64,000 nucleotides of DNA from Vitrella brassicaformis CCMP3155 (Eukaryota > Protista > Chromerida), in NCBI GenBank assembly GCA_001179505.1, contig CDMY01000428.1, forward strand, positions 1 to 64,000, read 5' to 3'. This document shows positions 52,872-64,000 of this stretch, piece by piece. The notes under the pieces are model-generated. The model was not told the origin of the DNA, searched no databases, and saw nothing but the letters and a program-made list of their open reading frames with translations. Both the position numbers and the translations under genes were made by a program. Within the stretch, counting starts at the first letter, position 1. Each line of letters begins with the position of its first letter.

Positions 52872-55800
52872 TCATCCCACCACGTTCTCGACCCATCGTG
52901 ACACCAGCAGATGGAAAAACAGAATGGCTAGTGGCACCCATCCGGTGGTCCCCCGCTCCACCGCCCCCCAGAAGGGTGTGTGTCTCGGCCTGGCGCGTCC
53001 CTTGGCCGTATCGACGATGAGGGGGTCGTCGAAGCGGACGCTGAATGAGGCGTCCATCAACATGCCACCCGCACCAGTCGACCAACGCACCTGCACACAT
53101 CAAGCCAATCCAACACCAACGCACAAATATCACATGCATCCACCAGACAGACAGACAGACAGACGGACAGGGAGACACGAATGGGCTAACAGTACCTGTA
53201 GGATGACCTGTCCGGAGAGATCAGGTGCCTGTTGCTGTGTGGGGTTCACGATCATGGTGCTCAAGGTGACAGTGAGAGTGTCGTTACGGATGCGGTTGTC
53301 GCCGATGAGAAACGTGACCCGCAGGTCGCCGTTCTGCAGCACACTACACTCGTAATCGTCGGCGGCGTCCTCCAGCAGCACCGACGGCCGCAGCTCAGCC
53401 GCACACCCCCCCGCTGTCTCCTCGTCGGGGAAGGACAGTGGGAAGGGGCTCTGGATGTCCAGAGAGAGACGGTCGCCTGAGTGAGAGAGAAACAGAGACA
53501 GCCGATGAATGGATGGATGGATGGATGTTGCTTGTGTGTAGGGTGGGTGTGGGTGGGAGGCATAGATACATACTTACGTAGTGTTTTTGGTAGCTCTGTA
53601 ATGACGATGGCAAGATAGAGGCGATGAGTGGCGCCCAGCTGGTTCGACCTGCACCCACCCACATATGGCAGATCGATGGGCCAAGTAATTACGCGTGCAA
53701 CAATGTCGGTTTGGTTCCCTCGCCCCACGCCCCGCCCCGCCCCGCCCATTTACCCACCCACCCACCCGATCCTGATGGAGTCGAGGCTTTTGAAGATGCT
53801 GTCCGGGACCACTGCCGAGCCGGGAATCGCATAGTTGGCCGATACCACCAAACCGTCAGCATTCTTGCATTGCATTCAACAGAAACACACACAGACCAGA
53901 CGAAGTGGGGAGGGAGGGAGGGAAGTTGCGTGCGTCGACCCACTCACTGTCACTTGACTCACCATGACGGCCATGCCAAACAGAGGCCGCCCGGGTGGCG
54001 AGGCGGGGGTCTTGAGGGTCAGTGCGATGGTCTTCTCGGCAGTATTGTTGATGTAGATCGGCTTCAGCTCACCGTTGGCCAGCTGTGCGTTGGCCCCCAC
54101 CCGCGAGAAGTCGTTGCTGGCCAGGTTGTCGCCCCTGAACTCGAAGCCGGCGGGCGCGAAGAGCTGGATGGAGCCGGCACTGACCACCACCTCTGGGACG
54201 AAGATGAGCGTCACACGCACTTCGGCGTTGCTCTCGGGCGGATAGACTATCTGCATGGCAAGGAAGGACACACAGAGACAAATAAACAAACGTACACGTG
54301 CAAGCCTGTCGCTCGGGCGGGCGGGCATTTTCTCAGTCAGGTGTGCATGCATCACCTGACCTGAGCCGTCATGACTTTAAGGGTGGGGGGTCGGAGGTTG
54401 GTGATGATCATCCTGGGCGTCTTCTGGAGGCTGGTCCTGTCGACGGTGCCGATCGACACGGACCACCAGGCGGCGGGATCGGACTCGTTGACGGGCTGCT
54501 TGGGGTGGTTGACCAGAAAGGTGATGTACTGCGCCACACCACCCTACACGACAGACAGACAGACAGACAGACAGACCAGCCATTGCAGAGAATAGTGAGC
54601 CAGTGCCATTCTCCTGCCGCGTACGTACCTCATAAGAGGCCCCCAGCACGAGACTCCTGAGCCTGGCGGTATTGCCGCCAAAGCACTGCCAGTCGGCCTG
54701 CGATGCGTCGCTGCAAGTGCCTGGGAAGCTGAAGTTGGCCGGTGGCTGTGTGGGCGGGGTCAGGACCACCTCCAGGTACTCTTGTGGCGCGCCTGCGTCG
54801 ATGTTGGGGACCAAAGCCAGCCGCCAGAGGGCACCCTCCGCACCCACGGCCTGCGACGAGATGCTGCTCCACACGAGATCGCTGATCTCGCCCTTTAGGC
54901 CCCCGGTCGCCAACAGATACTGAGCTCGCCAACAGGAGACAGAGAGGGAGAAAACTGGCTGGTGTGTGGTTCAGTGTGTGCACTCACTTGGCTGATTGGC
55001 CAGTCGCCCAGCGCATGGACCACATACCCCGTGATGCCCACGACAGTGTCAGGGGCGGTCAGGTTCTCCATCGCCAGAAAAAAACTCCTGTGGGCGCACA
55101 CAAGGAGATGTGAGTCTCACATTCGTCGAGGTTGAGTGCGGACACACCACAGACAGACACGCACCATTTGGCGGTGCCGTCGATGTCGGCTTCGGCAGGG
55201 TTGACCACGGTGACGGTGAACTGCAGAAGTTCCCTGGCAGGGATGGGCCCCTGCAGCGCCCACACTCGGCCGCCCTCAGACCCGATCGGCACACCGGAGG
55301 AAAGGGCCACTTCGGGGAACAGGTTCGTCACCACAGAGGTGCGCTCTAGCGTCTGCAGCTCAAACGCTGAACGAACAAAAGACAGACAGAAACCCGCATG
55401 GTCGATGGCTGCCCTGCCGTGTTTCCTTTCGACTTGACCTGTCGGGGGTATCACGATGATTGAAGGGTGGGTGGTGATAGCGGCGGCAGAGGGCCCGTTC
55501 TCGGCCACGACAGCGACACGTGTGTCGCTCTCGATCTTGATGGAAGAAGAGACCTTGAAGCTGACGGTGTGCAGGGTCTCGAACAGGTTCGTCGATTCCT
55601 GCAGCCAACCATCATGAGACAATTTAAGCGCCTTGCGATGTGCCAGTAAGTCTTGTCTGTCTTGTGCTTACAGTGGAGGTGGTTCCATCGGCTGCAAGGT
55701 TCGCCGCCTCGAATCCTGTCATCCGGTCGAAAATGCCACTCCTGGGCCCCTGGTTGATATTGGCGCTGTGGTCAGCCTCCTCCAGCCCCAGCCGCGTCGT

Positions 55801-58800
55801 GATGGCCCACGTCGTCCCGTCAGGCCTGGCAAAAGTGGGGTTGCTGACCTTGATGAAGCGAACGAGGAAGGGCTGGCCCGCCGTGCCTGAGAGGGCCTGC
55901 AGGGTGAGCCCCGCTGCGGTGGGGACGAGGCCGCCGAAAGAGGGGACGGCGCTGCCGAATGAGAAACCGTCTCTGCTGGCGATGTCCAGGCGGTCGAACG
56001 ACTGGATGGGGGTGAAGGACACGGTGACGGTGGAGGTGGCCGCCACCAGGCGGGATGACGTGGCGCTGGCGAACTCCTTCTCCAAGTATACCTGGAGATC
56101 CAGAATCTGAACAACAATGAATGTGTATGTATGTGACACACACACGCACACAGATAAATAAGAGGTCGGTGCGAGCGGGCTGTCTTGCCTTGTCGTGGCT
56201 GACGGTACGGTACTTACCATCGGCCTGACGCCCCACCCCGGGGTTTTCTGCTGGCTCACATCGCCTCCCAGCTCACGATGGTACCGAACCTGACAACAAG
56301 AGTGAGCTGATTTGATCCGCGGACTGACTGATCAACAATCGGCGCTTCTCAGCCTCACCTGCCAGTAGTTGTCAGTGAGGCCGATTGGTGCATTCGGGTT
56401 GTGGCCCATGATGGTCAGATTGAGGGTGCGGTTGCCAGACAGAGTGCGCTCAGCCGATCCCGACCCATCAGAAGGGGGCGCGCCGACCACTTCAAAAGTC
56501 ACCTCTGTGGGCTTGTCGCCGCGGGTACACACGCCAAGACTCAGCTCCTCATGCCTGAGTGCAGGCACATACATACCCATTTAGTCAAGGCCAGGGCCCG
56601 GCCCACTCTCTGTGTGTCTCTGCCCACTAACTACTCGTCTGTCTGTCTCCCTGCGTACGGTGTGATGGCCATGCCGGCATCGATGAGGGTGGCGTTGTTG
56701 AGGGCCTCCTCGACCGTCGGCAGCGTGTCTCCCTTGGTGGAGCAGAGGGGCGTAAACCCCAGCGGCGGCACGATGCTGAGCTGATCGCCCATCTGCGGCG
56801 GGACGTCGCTGTCGGGCAGAGTGATCAGCAGCTCCGCCACAAACACCATCGTGCCCTCCGTCTCGACAGATCCCCGCCTGCACACACACACACACACATG
56901 GAGGTCTTCTCCTTGTTTGTGTCTCGTTTCTCGGCTGGCTGCATATATACATTGGGAAATCTGCGTCGAATGATGCGCGTATGGGTATGCCGAAGATGCT
57001 GACGAAGTCGAGCGAGCTGCCGCTGGCGGCGTAGTCGGCGAGGTCGGTGAGGACACAAATGCCTGGAGGGTCCGTGACGATGCCCGAGATGACGACCGGC
57101 TTGCATGACCACACCTCGAAGGGCTTGGGGGACGTCACGATGGCAGAGGGATTCGTCACCACAAACTCGACCCTGACATGCACACAGGAAGGAGACAGAC
57201 CGATTGATTAAGCAGGCAGGCACGACAGGACAGGGGAGCCATGCCATGCCATCCCATGCGTGTGGGTCTTTAGTTTACATGATTGGTGTGTTGGCAGCGA
57301 TGTCTGAGCCTGGCGTGTTCAGCACAAAGGTGACGTACCCATCCTCAGCTCTGCAGCTAGCCCAGGCAGATGACACACTCATGCAGAGTCTCGCTGTCGT
57401 GTCTTATGGGCTGACAAGCATATCGCGTCAGCATTGGGCGGGAATTGGAATTCGCGTCTCAGGCCCGCATCGGTGAAGGTGAGCGTCGTCAGCTTCTCGC
57501 CTGGGACGTCCGTCCCGTTCATGACCACCCACTTCTCCATGATGGCTGGAGGGTCGCCGGCCAGAGAGGCGTTGATGGTGATGCCCGGCCCTGTGCACCC
57601 GCTGTTGATGCCGGCCGGGCCGCCAGCATGGGACAGGTATCCTGCACGCAATCACACAGCGGACGGACGGCATCACGATCACATGTCAGTCTGTTGGCCT
57701 GCCTGTCTGTCTGTCTGTCTCCTGAGCGGACCGTACCTGTGGGCAGTCTGAATGTGATGGAGCCGCCATCGCCTGGAATGTCATGAACTGGGGTCAGGTA
57801 GAAGCTCAGCCGGTTGGGCGTCGATTGGGCCTGACAAGAGAGAGGCAAGAGGGCTCAAGGGTGCCGTCAGTGCCCTTCTTTCCTCTCTCTCTCTCTCTCT
57901 CTCTGGGTTTCCTCACCCCATTGTCGGGCACCATGGCAGAGTCGAGGAAGGTCGCGAGTTCTCCCCTGGTGACTATGCCGGCGAGGTCCTCGAGCATGAA
58001 GACAAAGTGGTGCGGGTCGGGCTGGCGCACGGGGTTGGTCGCTTGGATGGAGAAGCCGTAGCTGCTCTGCCCGTTGAAGGGCTCCTTGCTCTCGAAGGCA
58101 ATCGTCACCTGGTGCCTGGCCGTCGGGTCGGCCGTGCAGCTCGCCACCCTGAACAACCCAGAGAAGTCCACAAATTCTCCGAAACTCCCGCCGAAGGGCT
58201 GCAGATTCAATGCTGATGTGCACCCCAGCGGGAACATGTACCTGGGGGCAGGACAGTTTGTGCGAAGACCGACCGTGGCGCGGCGTGGAGTCGATGAGTG
58301 CACTTACTGACTGACCCTTGCGGTGCGTGGATGGACATCGTAGGACTGAAGCCGAACGAGGATGTGCCTCTGTTGTTTTGGAAGCCGATGGTGAGAGTGC
58401 TGGTGGCGCCCGGCTTCATGACGGCCGTGTCCTCGCGCAGCAGTCGGACGGTCTCGAGGGGGGCGAGGATGTCGAAGGACTTGATGCTGATGGGGTGATC
58501 CAAGACATCCTCTTTGGTCTCATCCAAGTAGGGAGACGCCAACATATCAGACAGCTGCCCAAAGACGCAGAAAGACAATGAGCGTCAGTCAGCAAAGAGT
58601 CCTTCACGTGCTGACCGAACCGACCAGTGATGTGTTGCATGTCTTGGACGAGTGGAATGTGAAGATATCAGAGACCGCAGCGCCGCCCTGGTCTGTGGGG
58701 TTGGTGACGAAGAACCCGAAGCGGTACCTGCCCCTTGGCAGCTCAGTCACATCCTCGCCGACGGCAAACGTGACGTTGGTGATGTGGTTGTTGTTATCAC

Positions 58801-61800
58801 GGCCAAATACACACGAGACATATGACTCAAGAGGCCCCTCGGGCGGCGTGTAGCTACCGACAGGGTGGCAACCGGCAAGTCAACCAACAACACACGTCAA
58901 GGCATTGAATGTCCACCCACCCGGCCCCTCTGTGTGTGTGTGTGCTCTTACAATGGTGTGGCTTCCCGTGGGTAGAGCTGACACTCATCTGAGGGAGTGC
59001 CCACCGATGCGCCCAGAAAGCCCTGGCCGGCGGGGAAGGAGAGGAAGAGGCAGCCGCCCGATGGGACGGGCGCGGAGGTCTGGATGGCGAAGGTCAGCAG
59101 GTTCTGCGTGGCGGCTATAGAGGAGCTGTACTCGAGCACCAGGTTGCGCAGCACATTGACCTGCTGAGCCGGCCAGCGGACCATCCCAAACACACGGTGC
59201 TCGGGCAATGCGAAATCTGACACACCAGCGCAGCGGGGCAACCAACGGTTTCTCGTGTTGAGTTGTCTGTCTTGTGTTGTGTGCAGGTCCTTCCTGTCCT
59301 GCCTGCCGGGTTTGCGATGAACAGCCAGCTGTTGGCTGTGGGCTCGTCCGTAGGAGGCACCGACGTGATGGCCTGCAGTGCACCCACACAAACACATACA
59401 CGAGCCATTCGCGGGTGAGGTGAGACGGAGCCACGGTGCGTCAAATGCATGGTTCTCTGACCTTGAACTTGATGTAGTAGACGGCCTCTCTGTCTTCGAA
59501 TGGGTGGTCTGCCGTCAGCGTCACGCGTCTCACCACCCCCTGGTCAATGGAACTGCCCACTATCGTCCAGCTGATCCATGACGAAACGCACAAACACAGA
59601 GGTCAGGCAGTCAAGCAGGCTGTTCACCGCTCCGTGTGTGTGGCGTGATTTGATTTGCCCCTTACGTACGTATACGTACCTGCCCTCTGAGAAGGCGTAT
59701 TCGTAGAAGCGGGCTCGCTTGACGGCGGGCTGCTCGGCCCACCACGACATGTCCGGGACCTCGATGGTGTTGCCGATCTCACGGTAGTACTGATATATAT
59801 ATATATATGGGCACATCACATTCGCACATACATGAGCCAGTCGCCAACACAGACAGACAGATTGTAGGCAGGGCCTTGCACGCACGCACACAGACCCCTA
59901 CCTACCTGTGGGAACATGATCTCAAATGTGGTGAAGTTGGCGACACTCGCCGGCACCCGCCACTTCACCAGCACATGGGTGCTGCCGCCAGACACCCACT
60001 CCTCGGGCCGGCTGTCGATGGCCACGGCGTCGAGAATGGCCTCTCGCGAGCTGATCTGGGCCGCTGAGGGCCCTTCCATGACACCAAACTCCCTGTGGAT
60101 GGCCGGGCGGATGGTGGCAGCATATGTGTCGTTTTGCAGCGTGACGTTGGCTTCGGCCAGGATGCCGTCGATGGGGCTGCAGTCATACGCCCTATCGGCC
60201 TCGTAGCTACACGCCTGCAAGTGAATCGAGGGATGGATGGATCGATGTATCGATGTGCCATTCAACTCATTGTGTGTGGGGGGGGGGGGGGGCANNNNNN
60301 NNNNNNNNNNNNNNNNNNNNNNNNNNNNNNNNNNNNNNNNNNNNNNNNNNNNNNNNNNNNNNNNNNNNNNNNNNNNNNNNNNNNNNNNNNNNNNNNNNNN
60401 NNNNNNNNNNNNNNNNNNNNNNNNNNNNNNNNNNNNNNNNNNNNNNNNNNNNNNNNNNNNNNNNNNNNNNNNNNNNNNNNNNNNNNNNNNNNNNNNNNNN
60501 NNNNNNNNNNNNNNNNNNNNNNNNNNNNNNNNNNNNNNNNNNNNNNNNNNNNNNNNNNNNNNNNNNNNNNNNNNNNNNNNNNNNNNNNNNNNNNGGGGGG
60601 GGGGGGGGGGGGCATCACCGACCATGTCGAATGTGGTGATGTCCCAGTAGCCCCGTCTGGAGTAGTCTTGTGGGCTGTTGATGATCGGGACTGTGAAGCC
60701 GTAGAACTGGTCTCCCTTGAGCTCCTCGCCGTCCCCAAATGCCACATTGACACTGGCCGCACCACACACACAACACACATACAGACAAGCCAGTGTGTTG
60801 TGCGTGACCTTCGTTTGTTCGTTCCCCGTGTGCCTACGTACACGTGTGTGTATCCGGTGGGTGACTCCGCGCATGGGACCTTGACGGCGGCGATCGCGGG
60901 AAGTGAGAACTGCGGGTCGTCAGGGAAGGCGTCACCCACGTCGCCCAGCGTCATGTCGCACGGGAACTCGAAGCCAACATCGGTTGGCGCCCGCACCTCA
61001 ACAGATCCTGACTGCCAATCACCCATACCACACCACACCACACACATGACATTGCCAGGCAGTGCATCCTTGTGTGCTCCTTTGTTCCCACACACCTTTG
61101 CCGTGGTGCCACCGGTGGACTGTTCTGTCTTGAATGCGACGGCGATGCGGTTCATGTCTCCCTTGGCGAAGGACTCGACGGGGACGATGGTGGCCTTGGT
61201 CTGCGGGATGCGGCCCACCACAGCCACGTTCTTGGTGAACCTGTTGTCGGCGGGGTCGTTGTCGAACGCCTTGGACTGGCTGGTCTTGCTCACCAAGGCC
61301 GTGGAGCTCGGCACTCCCTGGAAACCATACAGCTGCATGCGCCGGCCACACACACACAAAAGTGATGGCTGCCGCGCTGTTGGGTGGCGCTGAGTACGTA
61401 CGTACGTACCTGTTCAGTGTTGACGGTCCAGACGTTGCTGGGGTGCGAGGCCTTCAGCGGCCGGTAAGGGTTCTCGACCAGCAAACGAAACAACAGAACC
61501 GTACCTGCATACAACCAGCCAGCCAGCCACGCACAGCGAGGAATGTTCGTTCGCAGCACCCACATGAATGGGATGGATCACCACTCACTCATTACCAGCT
61601 GGCACGAGCACGCCAGAGTCGAGTTGCAGGAGGCACACATTGGCGGCCTCGCCGCTGTTGGCGACCCATGTGGCGTTGATGGACCCGAAGCCAGGGGGGC
61701 CGTCCAAAGCCTGACCTGTCGACTGGCGGGCCAGCAGAAACAGGGGGGACGCGGCGCTGCTGCTCGCCTGCATGACATGGAGGACACAAACATGGATGGC

Positions 61801-64000
61801 AGAGATCCGCCAGTGTATCCATCGTGGGCTGGCTGACACGAACGTACGAATGCGTCGATGTTTGTGGTTTGGCATGTGTATTGGTATGTCACGCCCCCCT
61901 CCGTCCACTTGGGCAGCTCGAAACGGAAGTAGGTCGGCTTTCCACCAGCTGCCGCACCAGACATTATCGGACCTACATCGCATCAATCACACACCGCCAA
62001 CAAAACACCTCTGACGCACGCCATCCACTCTCCTCCCCTCCCTCCTTTTGTCTCTACCCGTTCTGACTTTGACGTGCAGCAGGTTGACCGATGTCGCCCC
62101 CAGCACCGAGTAGAACTGCTGGTCATTGTTGCTGTCCTCATCCCAGTGGTACGTGGCCAGCGATGCGAACGGCACGCTCACCGGGTAGTAGAGCCGCGCC
62201 GAGCTGAGCAGATTGACCCCGCCGTGACCGCCCCAAGCCAGATACGAGGCCCCGCCCTTCACAGCCTGAAGGGACACACGAGACACATTGCTGCTCGATC
62301 ATTCATCCTTGTCTCTGTCTGTGTGCGCATTGGCACCATTGCAAAGTAGAAAGGCACTAGAGGGAAGAAGCCGGGGAAGGACCCGATTGAGCTCCGGAAA
62401 GGCTGCACTTCATGTAAAGTGTACTTGTACGGCTCCTACAACATACACACACAAGCAAGAGCCGAGAAATCACGACCATCATCCATGTCGCCTTTTCTCT
62501 TTCTCTCTCCACTTACCGTAATGGCTCCGTCGACGACGTGCATCTTGATGACATTGAGCCTGGAGGGGTTCATGTTGAAGTAGTTCTCAAAGGTGATGTC
62601 GGCGTGTGTGCAGGTGCCCACGCCCGAGACGGGTGTGCACGTGGCGTAGTAGCCCTCGGACACGTCCCACATGGTCAACGGGTACATGAAGATGTACACG
62701 TGGTCGTCAGCCGCCAAACCCGAATCGGACGGCGTCAGGATGAAGGAGAAGGTACACTTGCCCGTCGAAGAGCTGCACTCAACTGTTTTCTGTGCCAGAC
62801 AGAAAGAGGGGAAGCTTGGGTCGTGTGGCCCACTGCGTGTGTGCGCTGGTTACTTACCTGTGCCGCGATGTCTGGGGCGAGTTCCAGTGCGCCCGAGTCG
62901 TTGAGCTCTGGCACGATGCCGTCGCTGTTGATTTGGAAGCTGGATGTGTCGAAGGCCGCCGTCCCCTGCTCGATGATCTCACACTGGTCGTCGGCAGGGT
63001 CGCTGAGCACAGCTATCTCTACCGTGGCATTCCTGACACACACGTGAGGGAGGGAGGGAGGAAGGGAGCGAGGGAGGGAGACACGTGTGTGGCTGTGGTG
63101 TAAGGACTGTGTTGCCTATAGAGATACGTTTGGTTGAAGGGGTCAGCCAGAAAGGCTCCCTTTACCACAAACTCGTATGAAGCACCCGCCTTCAGGCCGT
63201 TGTACTGCAGGCAGGCAAGCAGACAGGCAGGGATGATGATGGTTCGCGGGCAGCTATCTATCAATCTGCCTCATATAAGCTATATACCTCTACCTTAGAG
63301 AACTGCAGGTAGAGCTCGACGTAGTCATATGTGGCCACATGCCTGGAATCGTCATTGAGAAAGACACAGGGAGGGAAAGGCAACGAACGTCGGTTTTGTG
63401 CACCACCTCTCCTCCCTCCCCTCTCTCACCAGCACTTGGCGGGCATCGGGAACCCATCGGCGTCGTTGCTGTTGAGCTCAAAGAAGATGCTGCCGCACTC
63501 CCCCTGCGAACCCCGGTCAGGCAGCGCCTCGAATGCCGGCGTGTCGTCGGTGATGGTGAACTCCCTCGAGTCCGCCCCGTCGGTCCCGCTGTACACGGTG
63601 TAGTCTTCCCACTGTGTGGGGATGATCGGCACCGCCTTGAAGGCGCTCTTGTCGGGGAACCTCAGCCGCACGCTGTAGGCCTTGTCGATCTGGTAGCCGC
63701 CGTACAGGTTGGCGAAGCTGCCGGGGACGTTGCAGAGGTTGTGGGTCGTGTTGACGGTGCCGACGCTCGACGTCTGGAATGACACGTAGATGGGGCCGGC
63801 CTGAAAATACAGACGAGACCGATCAAAGACGCACATCTGTCACGATGGTGGGAGTGCTTGTGTGGCTGGTCTGGTGCTGACTTACCACATTCATGAATAC
63901 CATGTCCTTGTAATCGGTCGTCGGCACGATCGAATCTCGCTGCATGGAAAAGAAGGTAGCATTTTTCCCCCCTCTACAAACACATCTGCATGATGCGAAT
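52872..64000 (-). CDS. Giant multi-exon protein (5'-truncated by the window end) made of degenerate beta-rich repeats, with a hydrophobic C-terminal tail; probable surface protein
   Basis: Many minus-strand exons from about 63800 down to 52872 with alternating hydrophobic beta-strand patterns and recurring P-x-G-F-x-F and (V/T)-N-P...W-x-(I/V) motifs; last exon ends GWVPLAILFFHLLVSRWVENVVG*. Not every junction was phase-checked. Confidence 0.75.
60295..60594. other. Assembly gap (300 N)
   Basis: Run of N flanked on both sides by poly-G, in an intron of the giant repeat gene. Confidence 1.

What the first reader, a model, noticed from the sequence alone, without database searches (positions are those of the whole stretch)
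52872..64000. Giant uncharacterised repeat protein: at least 10 divergent beta-sandwich-like modules with a GPI-like tail
Seen: more than 11 kb of minus-strand exons, still open at the window end. A module signature recurs: LLVENPYRP..SNVWTVNT (~61480), VPIINSPQ..GYWDITT (~60680), FGFFVTNPTD (~58710), FSIQATNPVR (~58040), EFVVTNPSA..FEVWS (~57160), IMGHNPNA..NYWQVRL (~56400), IKVSNPTF..TTWAITT (~55840), TVTVVNPAE..AKW (~55200), FLVNHPKQ..AWWSVSI (~54510), MIVNPTQ (~53245). Each is typically preceded by an 'S-x-V-T-V-x-F...P-x-G-F-x-F' segment. The repeats are invisible at DNA level, so they are ancient duplications. The C-terminus has a basic spacer and then WVPLAILFFHLLV, which is GPI-signal-like. 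Inference: a very long rod-like surface or wall protein of more than 2000 aa that I cannot assign to a named family; a possible free-living counterpart of apicomplexan surface or adhesion proteins, or a cyst-wall component. This is the strongest candidate for an undescribed system here.
Basis: partly seen in the sequence, partly recalled or inferred. Interest (0 to 1): 0.75.

Follow-up and report, generated by a model that had tools for sequence, protein, structure and literature searches.

The report
Giant repeat surface protein of Vitrella
This alga, a free-living relative of malaria parasites, has a very long gene for a secreted protein built from about twelve copies of an unnamed module predicted to fold like the building blocks of bacterial adhesion fibres. 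It belongs to a family of at least seven such genes, which points to a cell-surface rod or coat, but nothing here is radically new.

Summary
The minus-strand exons at 52872-64000 are the 3' two thirds of one gene. It runs from an ATG at contig position 69091, beyond the window, to TGA at 52872: 16.2 kb, about 55 exons, about 3,600 aa. The genome is Vitrella brassicaformis CCMP3155.

The gene is collinear over its whole length with two paralogues. One is the annotated 3,518-aa CEM10746.1, an "unnamed protein product". It has an N-terminal signal peptide and a C-terminal hydrophobic tail.

A profile built only from modules of other genes finds ten of them; no decoy scored above 0.2 bits per domain.

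The same architecture recurs in at least seven Vitrella loci. The assembly gap lies inside an intron and removes no coding sequence.

No link to apicomplexan antigens was found. Other readers of this scan noted the same stretch and what is probably a paralogue.

Verdict: an unnamed Ig-like module family forming giant surface proteins. Function is inferred, and interest is moderate.

The parts
52872..64000 (-). 3' two thirds (about 35 of about 55 exons) of one giant gene. The gene continues upstream to an ATG at contig position 69091 (L004:5091).
   Evidence: Gene model by dynamic programming guided by P0001; collinear tblastn chain from P0001 residues 29-3360 to 68862-53768. Exon borders are approximate, least certain at 59.2-59.9 kb and 63.8-64.2 kb.
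62074..64000 (-). Middle region, not NP modules. It includes the conserved 'R-x-R-F-P ... C-G-x-x-F-x-E ... G-F-P-M-P-x-K-C' exon at 63430-63836.
   Evidence: 37% identity to P0001 1177-1300; three-paralogue alignment A7; no Pfam hit.
61330..62073 (-).
   Evidence: Other-gene profile 8.6 bits; leave-one-out best 14.3 bits for the M1 copy in paralogue P0001
60209..61233 (-).
   Evidence: Other-gene profile 18.8 bits, iE 2.5e-6; leave-one-out up to 28.9 bits
60295..60594 (.). Assembly gap (N) inside the intron 60215-60622, flanked by poly-C on both sides
   Evidence: flanking exons abut in the paralogue alignment
59268..60076 (-).
   Evidence: Placed by position and by alignment with P0001 1960-2115; not recognised by either profile test; exon structure uncertain
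58637..59193 (-).
   Evidence: Other-gene profile 26.0 bits, iE 1.6e-8; leave-one-out 27.1 bits
57965..58485 (-).
   Evidence: Other-gene profile 32.1 bits, iE 2e-10; leave-one-out 29.0 bits; A5 alignment 41-43% identity to paralogues
57097..57955 (-).
   Evidence: Other-gene profile 23.2 bits, iE 1.1e-7
56254..57000 (-).
   Evidence: Other-gene profile 6.8 bits; leave-one-out 13.4 bits for the window copy, 19.6 for the P0001 copy
55768..56241 (-). Its main exon, 55672-56106, holds a whole module; a 24-aa mini-exon lies at 56218-56289.
   Evidence: other-gene profile 15.6 bits; 35% identity to P0001 2822-2941, E 3.1e-12
55128..55740 (-).
   Evidence: Leave-one-out 12.7 bits for the window copy, 30.7 for the P0001 copy; in register in A6
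54421..55118 (-).
   Evidence: Motifs and paralogue alignment; leave-one-out 8.5 bits for the window copy, 14.8 for the C271 copy
53843..54393 (-).
   Evidence: Three-paralogue module profile (mods.hmm) hits the stop-free segment 53879-54376, iE 4.5e-9; the later A6 profile gives E 1.8e-6 at 53972-54253
53058..53830 (-).
   Evidence: Three-paralogue module profile hits segment 53133-53573, iE 4.2e-13; other-gene profile 5.5 bits
52902..52940 (-). C-terminal hydrophobic stretch WVPLAILFFHLLV, followed by 9 residues and the stop
   Evidence: Translation; Kyte-Doolittle 11-residue maximum 2.48
52872..52874 (-). Stop codon TGA

Best explanation
This is one intact, intron-rich Vitrella brassicaformis gene (contig C428, 69091 to 52872, minus strand). 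It encodes a secreted protein of about 3,600 aa.

Shown. The protein has a signal-peptide-like leader. An N-terminal half follows, built from a different Cys-containing module ('Y-x-L-C-[WY]-C-P') and a conserved middle region. Then come about twelve tandem copies of an unnamed module of 120-170 aa, and a C-terminal hydrophobic stretch. The conserved motifs of the module (x-V-x-V-x-F; G-x-I-x-I-x-x-P-x-G-F-x-F; Y-x-F-x-I-x-V-x-N-P; W-x-I-x-T) are its beta-strands. A family member folds confidently as a nine-strand Ig-like sandwich, of the type seen in bacterial pilins and MSCRAMM adhesins, cohesins, YcnI and integrin legs. The gene belongs to a Vitrella family found at seven or more loci; the six examined closely share the same architecture.

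Inferred. The protein is held at the outer face of the plasma membrane by its C-terminus, through a GPI anchor or a short TM tail. The twelve sandwich modules would form a semi-rigid stalk, roughly 50 nm long if each module spans 4-5 nm. The stalk would project the N-terminal Cys-module region away from the cell. That would make it a fibrillar surface or coat protein for adhesion or cell-envelope architecture, analogous to fibrillar adhesins.
For: Single gene and paralogues. The genome matches the published assembly exactly (72,700,666 bp, 1064 scaffolds): against PMC4501334; P0001 is CEM10746.1.

Leader and tail hydropathy. P0001 has a canonical signal peptide and a hydrophobic extreme C-terminus preceded by small residues.

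Family: the module occurs at seven loci, C428, C405, C271, C234, C255, C553 and C770. C234, C255 and C553 were read and share the Cys modules, the NP modules and a hydrophobic C-terminus; C770 was detected only as module hits.
Against: Function is not tested at all, and no expression data were available. The folded module comes from a paralogous gene (C255), not from the window. The window's only single-exon module (M8) failed to fold with 3 sequences (pLDDT 35). The link between the two is therefore homology: A6 register and profile E-values.

M3 is not statistically recognised, and M10 only marginally. The structural matches form a flat list with no stand-out, so no specific functional analogy follows from the fold. 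Conservation is about even along the protein at 25-42%, which does not single out an N-terminal 'head'.

The window protein has 9 residues, including R and E, after the hydrophobic stretch, which is atypical for a GPI signal. Exon borders come from my own crude model, and several very short 'introns' with weak signals may be artefacts.
Confidence: 0.6

Rival explanations
1. It is a wall or sporangium-wall matrix protein. On this reading the modules are carbohydrate-binding or cohesin-like units that bind or cross-link the thick laminated wall polysaccharide, rather than forming a passive stalk. The protein would be released from its anchor or embedded in the wall.
For: Structural neighbours include CBM3, a chitin-binding domain, chitinase accessory domains and cohesins. 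There is a weak sub-threshold Pfam hit to a galactose-binding-like domain on paralogue module M2 (E 2.9e-4, 21.5 bits against a cut-off of 27) and a weak one to NPCBM_assoc. Vitrella also encodes arrays of oocyst-wall-protein domains, so wall building by giant secreted proteins has a precedent in this organism (PMC4501334).
Against: Those matches are no better than the pilin or integrin ones. The conserved residues look like core and strand residues, not a binding face (A6). No carbohydrate-binding family passes a threshold.
Confidence: 0.2
2. It is a type I transmembrane receptor or sensor. The C-terminal hydrophobic stretch would be a true TM helix with a very short cytoplasmic tail, and the ectodomain would sense ligands or contacts.
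For: The window tail has 9 residues after the hydrophobic stretch. The C553 family member ends with a hydrophobic stretch followed by a V-K-K-R-R-T-S-G type basic tail.
Against: A 9-residue tail has no recognisable signalling module. P0001 and the C255 member end directly in the hydrophobic stretch, which is GPI-like.
Confidence: 0.12
3. It is a decaying or mis-assembled locus. Several unrelated genes or a pseudogene would have been joined by my gene model across the gap and through artefactual introns.
For: There is a 300-N gap. Seven modelled introns of 46-61 nt mostly have weak splice signals, and two of them contain stops if read through. The window's own protein did not appear in the protein libraries.
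Against: The locus is collinear end to end, in order, with two independent paralogues from residue 29 to 3360. The gap lies in an intron between abutting exons. Codon bias is consistent throughout, with GC3 at 72%. The upstream neighbour is a separate PARP-like gene.
Confidence: 0.04
4. It is a free-living homologue of apicomplexan surface antigens or adhesins (6-Cys/s48-45, SRS, TRAP-like).
For: Only the phylogenetic position of Vitrella and the general architecture of surface anchor plus beta-rich repeats.
Against: No Pfam hit to any such family. None appears among the top 50 structural matches. A search of 1.84 billion representatives with module M8 found only the Vitrella paralogue. Word searches with the full paralogue found nothing else.
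Confidence: 0.02

Closest known systems
CEM10746.1 / UniProt A0A0G4FC22 (P0001), Vitrella brassicaformis CCMP3155, 3,518 aa, 'unnamed protein product', encoded on contig C405
   Same: Full-length collinear paralogue, 32% identity over 3,187 aligned positions. It has the same order of parts: signal peptide, Cys modules, middle region, 12 NP modules and a hydrophobic C-terminus.
   Different: It is a different locus and a diverged sequence. Its C-terminus ends directly in the hydrophobic stretch. It is uncharacterised, and its UniRef label 'Protein arginine methyltransferase 10' has no support in its Pfam scan.
Ig-like domains of Gram-positive pilins and MSCRAMM adhesins (EbpB 9lr7/9lj6, LrpA 8wb8, SpaD 4hss, RrgB, ACE, CNM)
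   Different: Sequence identity is only 8-13%. There is no LPxTG sortase motif. The organism is a eukaryote, the protein uses a signal peptide plus a C-terminal hydrophobic anchor, and isopeptide-bond residues were not tested.
YcnI / DUF1775 copper-binding Ig-like domain (7me6, 3esm)
   Different: It is tied with many other sandwiches. The sequence hit is not significant. YcnI is a single-domain bacterial protein, and its metal-binding residues were not examined.
Cohesin, CBM3 and alpha-2-macroglobulin/complement MG or receptor-binding domains; integrin alpha leg (thigh/calf) domains
   Different: No sequence relationship, and different partner domains.
Ciliate immobilisation antigens (GPI-linked, Cys-periodic surface coats)
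   Same: Alveolate surface-coat proteins encoded by multigene families. The chromerid genome paper used them as its comparison when it reported no amplified GPI-linked families (PMC4501334).
   Different: They are much smaller and built from Cys-periodic repeats. No sequence or fold comparison was made here.

Membership tests
Ig-like / E-set type beta-sandwich fold (pilin-cohesin-like) | All-beta two-sheet sandwich of 7-9 strands, with structural similarity to solved members | tested here: met
Any Pfam-A family (including GBD_T9SS_assoc, CARDB/NPCBM_assoc, SpaA_4, Transglut_C) | Score at or above the curated gathering threshold | tested here: not met
   Best is GBD_T9SS_assoc at 21.5 bits against a cut-off of 27, on the paralogue only. 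All other hits are singletons at E >= 0.017.
GPI-anchored surface protein | N-terminal signal peptide | tested here: met
   The leader after the ATG at 69091 has a hydrophobic core (KD 2.48) and a small-residue C-G-A site. An in-frame TAG lies immediately upstream. P0001 has a canonical leader. This rests on inspection and hydropathy only; no dedicated predictor was available.
GPI-anchored surface protein | C-terminal hydrophobic signal at the extreme C-terminus, preceded by a spacer and a small-residue omega site | tested here: inconclusive
   The window protein has a 13-residue hydrophobic stretch followed by 9 residues that include R and E, with G/A/T candidates upstream. P0001 and the C255 member end in the hydrophobic stretch; the C553 member has a basic tail after it.
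GPI-anchored surface protein | Lipid anchor demonstrated (PI-PLC release, mass spectrometry) | not testable with these tools
   Experimental.
Apicomplexan 6-Cys (s48/45) or SRS surface antigens | Pfam s48_45 or SAG domain match, or the characteristic fold | tested here: not met
   No hit; absent from the top 50 fold matches.
Sortase-assembled pilins / MSCRAMMs | LPxTG sorting signal; bacterial origin | tested here: not met
   No LPxTG in any of the three paralogues; the gene is a eukaryotic nuclear gene with GT-AG introns.
Vitrella giant two-module surface-protein family (unnamed; defined here) | Collinear order of signal peptide, 'Y-x-L-C-x-C-P' modules, G-F-P-M-P middle region, NP modules and hydrophobic C-terminus | tested here: met
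   the three close paralogues; C234, C553, C255.

The most novel reading that the evidence does not exclude
The NP module would be the founding, still unnamed member of an alveolate-wide Ig-like domain family, present in chromerids, Perkinsozoa and ciliates. It would build giant surface fibrils. The Vitrella family at seven or more loci would then be a surface coat that the genome paper missed when it reported no amplified GPI-linked families, and so a pre-parasitic form of alveolate surface architecture.
Probability: 0.3. Interest if true: 0.55.

Novelty: new variant of a known kind. Interest (0 to 1): 0.4.

Why it matters
Chromerids are the closest free-living relatives of apicomplexan parasites, so their cell-surface repertoire sets the baseline from which parasite adhesins and coats evolved.

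This report defines a multigene family, present at seven or more loci, of proteins of about 3,500 aa. They are made of two module types that no database names, and one of the two types now has a confident Ig-like model. That gives annotators a new domain definition: alignment A6 could seed a Pfam-type family. It also gives experimentalists a concrete candidate for the Vitrella surface or wall.

It does not overturn anything. Tandem Ig-like surface fibres are a common solution across life.

Tried and rejected
- Direct phmmer of module M8 against all frames of the locus found no internal repeat. A self-comparison of the three-paralogue profile with hhalign gave only weak support for the C-terminal modules (P 0.004-0.2). 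It gave clear support for the N-terminal Cys modules (P 2e-6). The repeats became clear only with motif-stacked profiles.
- Three word searches found nothing beyond P0001 itself: one on exon M8, one on full P0001 and one on its N-terminal half. The tool's length window means short exon queries cannot see giant proteins.
- The one large search, with M8 as query, found only P0001 plus an unrelated low-complexity protein. In hindsight M8 is the least canonical module, so a canonical one might have reached further.
- AlphaFold2 on exon M8 with 3 sequences failed (pLDDT 35).
- Alignments that included full-length P0001, or half-modules, were misaligned and were discarded (A1, A2, A4).
- Literature searches found no description of the family.
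- A joined, spliced protein model was built and used only inside the sandbox. It was never sent to a search or folding tool; all external searches were run exon by exon by reference. Searching or folding the joined model was therefore left out.
Full report
**What the window is.** The window is G000:C428:1-64000, part of a 78,113-bp contig. The genome has 72,700,666 bases in 1,064 contigs. That is exactly the published Vitrella brassicaformis CCMP3155 assembly (PMC4501334, read). The closest database protein is also from that organism. GC content is about 59%. No part was taken for human.

**The observation.** Translating the minus strand shows a chain of stop-free, protein-like segments separated by short GT-AG introns, running from 64000 down to a TGA at 52872. 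The C-terminal text is as quoted. DNA-level repeats are limited to intronic (CAGA)n runs.

**The assembly gap (tested first, as asked).** The N run at 60295-60594 is bordered on both sides by a poly-C tract. It lies between a GT donor at 60622 and an AG acceptor at 60215.
- The exon before the gap ends with '...YWDITTFDM' and the exon after it begins 'ACSYEADRAYDC...'.
- In the three-paralogue alignment these align to adjacent residues of the paralogues, with nothing missing.
- Without the 300 N the intron would be about 108 nt, typical of this gene, where most introns are 46-116 nt.

The gap therefore removes no coding sequence that I can detect, and the frame is continuous (phase 0 on both sides).

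**Extent of the gene.** I fetched the rest of the contig. The coding chain continues to an ATG at 69091. This ATG is immediately preceded by an in-frame TAG and is followed by a hydrophobic leader. A crude gene model gives about 55 exons and about 3,667 aa over 16,220 bp. The model used codon log-odds, GT-AG rules and a bonus for collinear tblastn hits to the paralogue. Another first-stage note on the same stretch gives the same length of 16,220 letters. Further upstream, at 71.7-72.7 kb, lies a separate PARP-like gene. Exon borders are approximate. Seven very short modelled introns, mostly with weak signals, may be artefacts.

The joined model was used only inside the sandbox. Every external search or fold used single exons by reference, or database proteins. 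The step of searching or folding the joined protein was left out.

**Relatives.**
- Pfam gives nothing on 20 exon pieces.
- A word search with the one module that lies in a single exon (M8, 55672-56106) found nothing.
- The full HMMER scan of 1.84 billion representatives with M8 found one true hit: P0001, 3,518 aa, E 3.1e-12, 35% identity at residues 2822-2941.
- P0001 is CEM10746.1 / A0A0G4FC22, an 'unnamed protein product' of Vitrella. It is encoded on contig C405 of the same genome.
- The window gene is collinear with P0001 from residue 29 to 3360. A third copy on C271 is collinear too.
- Pairwise identity is 27-37% and about even along the length.

This settles the 'several unrelated genes' alternative.

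P0001 has a canonical signal peptide. Its hydrophobic extreme C-terminus is preceded by small residues, which is a classical GPI-signal layout. The window protein has a 13-residue hydrophobic stretch followed by 9 more residues, so a GPI anchor and a short-tailed TM anchor both remain possible.

**Are the modules real repeats?** Simple comparisons fail, and a profile self-comparison is only marginal for the C-terminal half. I therefore cut twelve modules (M1-M12, P0001 1600-3470) out of the three-way alignment and stacked them. Three tests followed.
- Leave-one-module-out profiles recognise M2, M4, M5, M6, M7 and M9 at 17-31 bits, against a best of 10-16 bits among about 1,150 decoys. M1, M10 and M11 are marginal. 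M3, M8 and M12 are not recognised.
- The three-paralogue profile finds complete modules in further Vitrella loci at E down to 6e-13: C234, C255 and C553. The later A6 profile also finds C770.
- Conversely, a profile made only from 16 modules of those other genes hits the window's spliced model at E 2.4e-46 with ten domains (M1, M2, M4-M9, M11, M12). The 33 reversed or shuffled decoys reach at most 0.2 bits per domain.

The repeat architecture is therefore real: twelve modules by position, ten with independent statistical support in the window gene.

**Fold.** The first AlphaFold2 job, exon M8 with three sequences, failed (pLDDT 35). The other family genes carry whole modules in single exons. 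That allowed a 25-row alignment (A6) in good register, which includes five window pieces; the N of the NP motif is nearly invariant. The second job, whose target was a C255 module, gave pLDDT 88.5, pTM 0.83 and nine strands. The conserved motifs map onto strands.

Foldseek and VIA-align return a long, flat list of Ig-like sandwiches:
- CBM3 (Foldseek list only)

No match stands out, and none is an apicomplexan antigen. Profile searches against PDB sequences are not significant. The module is thus an unnamed sequence family with a common adhesin or stalk-type fold. The window's modules are assigned to that fold by homology, not by a model of their own.

**The family.** Reading the other loci shows the same order of parts in C234, C553 and C255:
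- 'Y-x-L-C-x-C-P' modules
- a 'G-F-P-M-P-x-x-C' middle region
- NP modules
- a hydrophobic C-terminus, which in C553 is followed by a basic tail

Counting C770, where only module hits were seen, the module occurs at seven or more loci. The genome paper's survey of extracellular proteins does not mention this family, and it states that no amplified GPI-linked families were seen. The ESM Atlas places both a window module and the canonical module next to unnamed clusters from Perkinsozoa and Ciliophora (cosine 0.94-0.97). This is a lead, not evidence. Two metagenome scans found nothing.

**Mechanism.** The following is shown: a secretory leader, about 12 tandem Ig-like modules, a C-terminal hydrophobic anchor element, and membership of a multigene family. 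The rest is inferred. The protein would be held at the cell surface by its C-terminus, with the modules forming a stalk of roughly 50 nm that displays the N-terminal Cys-module region. It would thus be a fibrillar coat or adhesion protein.

The rivals are a wall-matrix or glycan-binding role, a short-tailed receptor, and a broken or mis-joined locus. They are weighed in their own sections of this report. Kinship with apicomplexan surface antigens found no support.

**Verdict.** This is a new domain family and architecture of a familiar kind, of moderate interest.

Noticed in passing
L004:2500-5100 (contig 66.5-69.1 kb), same gene upstream of the window: The N-terminal half of the protein is built from a second unnamed module with a 'G-x-Y-x-L-C-[WY]-C-P-G' motif. 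A profile self-comparison supports it as a repeat (P 2e-6 and 7e-5). It has no Pfam hit, and it recurs in the C234 and C553 family genes.
   Followed up: partly
G000 contigs C405 (~137-153 kb), C271 (~17-32 kb), C234 (~27-37 kb), C255 (~490-499 kb), C553 (~200-211 kb), C770 (~184-190 kb): At least six further loci carry the same NP module. The five examined closely (all but C770) share the whole architecture. C553 ends in a TM-like stretch plus a basic tail; C255 and P0001 end in the hydrophobic stretch.
   Followed up: partly
L004:7676-8754 (contig 71.7-72.8 kb, minus strand): The upstream neighbour is a separate gene. Two consecutive exons each match the PARP catalytic domain weakly but collinearly (E 0.0016 and 0.0093, both below threshold).
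   Followed up: partly
P0001 (CEM10746.1 / A0A0G4FC22): Its UniRef cluster is named 'Protein arginine methyltransferase 10'. The protein's Pfam scan shows no methyltransferase domain, so this is probably an annotation error carried over from elsewhere.
   Followed up: partly
window:44958-45257: A second 300-N assembly gap in the window, outside the finding.
   Followed up: no
window:53136-53176, 54544-54584, 59838-59870 and others: Introns of the gene carry (CAGA)n / (GTCT)n and (GT)n microsatellites. Translated, these give the recurring 'SVCLSVC' and 'CVCVCV' strings.
   Followed up: no
window:56107-56217: A 111-nt intron that is stop-free and a multiple of three, so it reads through in frame. 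It is flanked by a 24-aa mini-exon (56218-56289). Such introns are invisible to ORF-based reading and inflated my first model.
   Followed up: yes
window 52872-64000, protein libraries: The window gene's own product did not appear in either protein library, although its paralogue did. Either the public gene model here differs or is fragmented, or the product is withheld.
   Followed up: no
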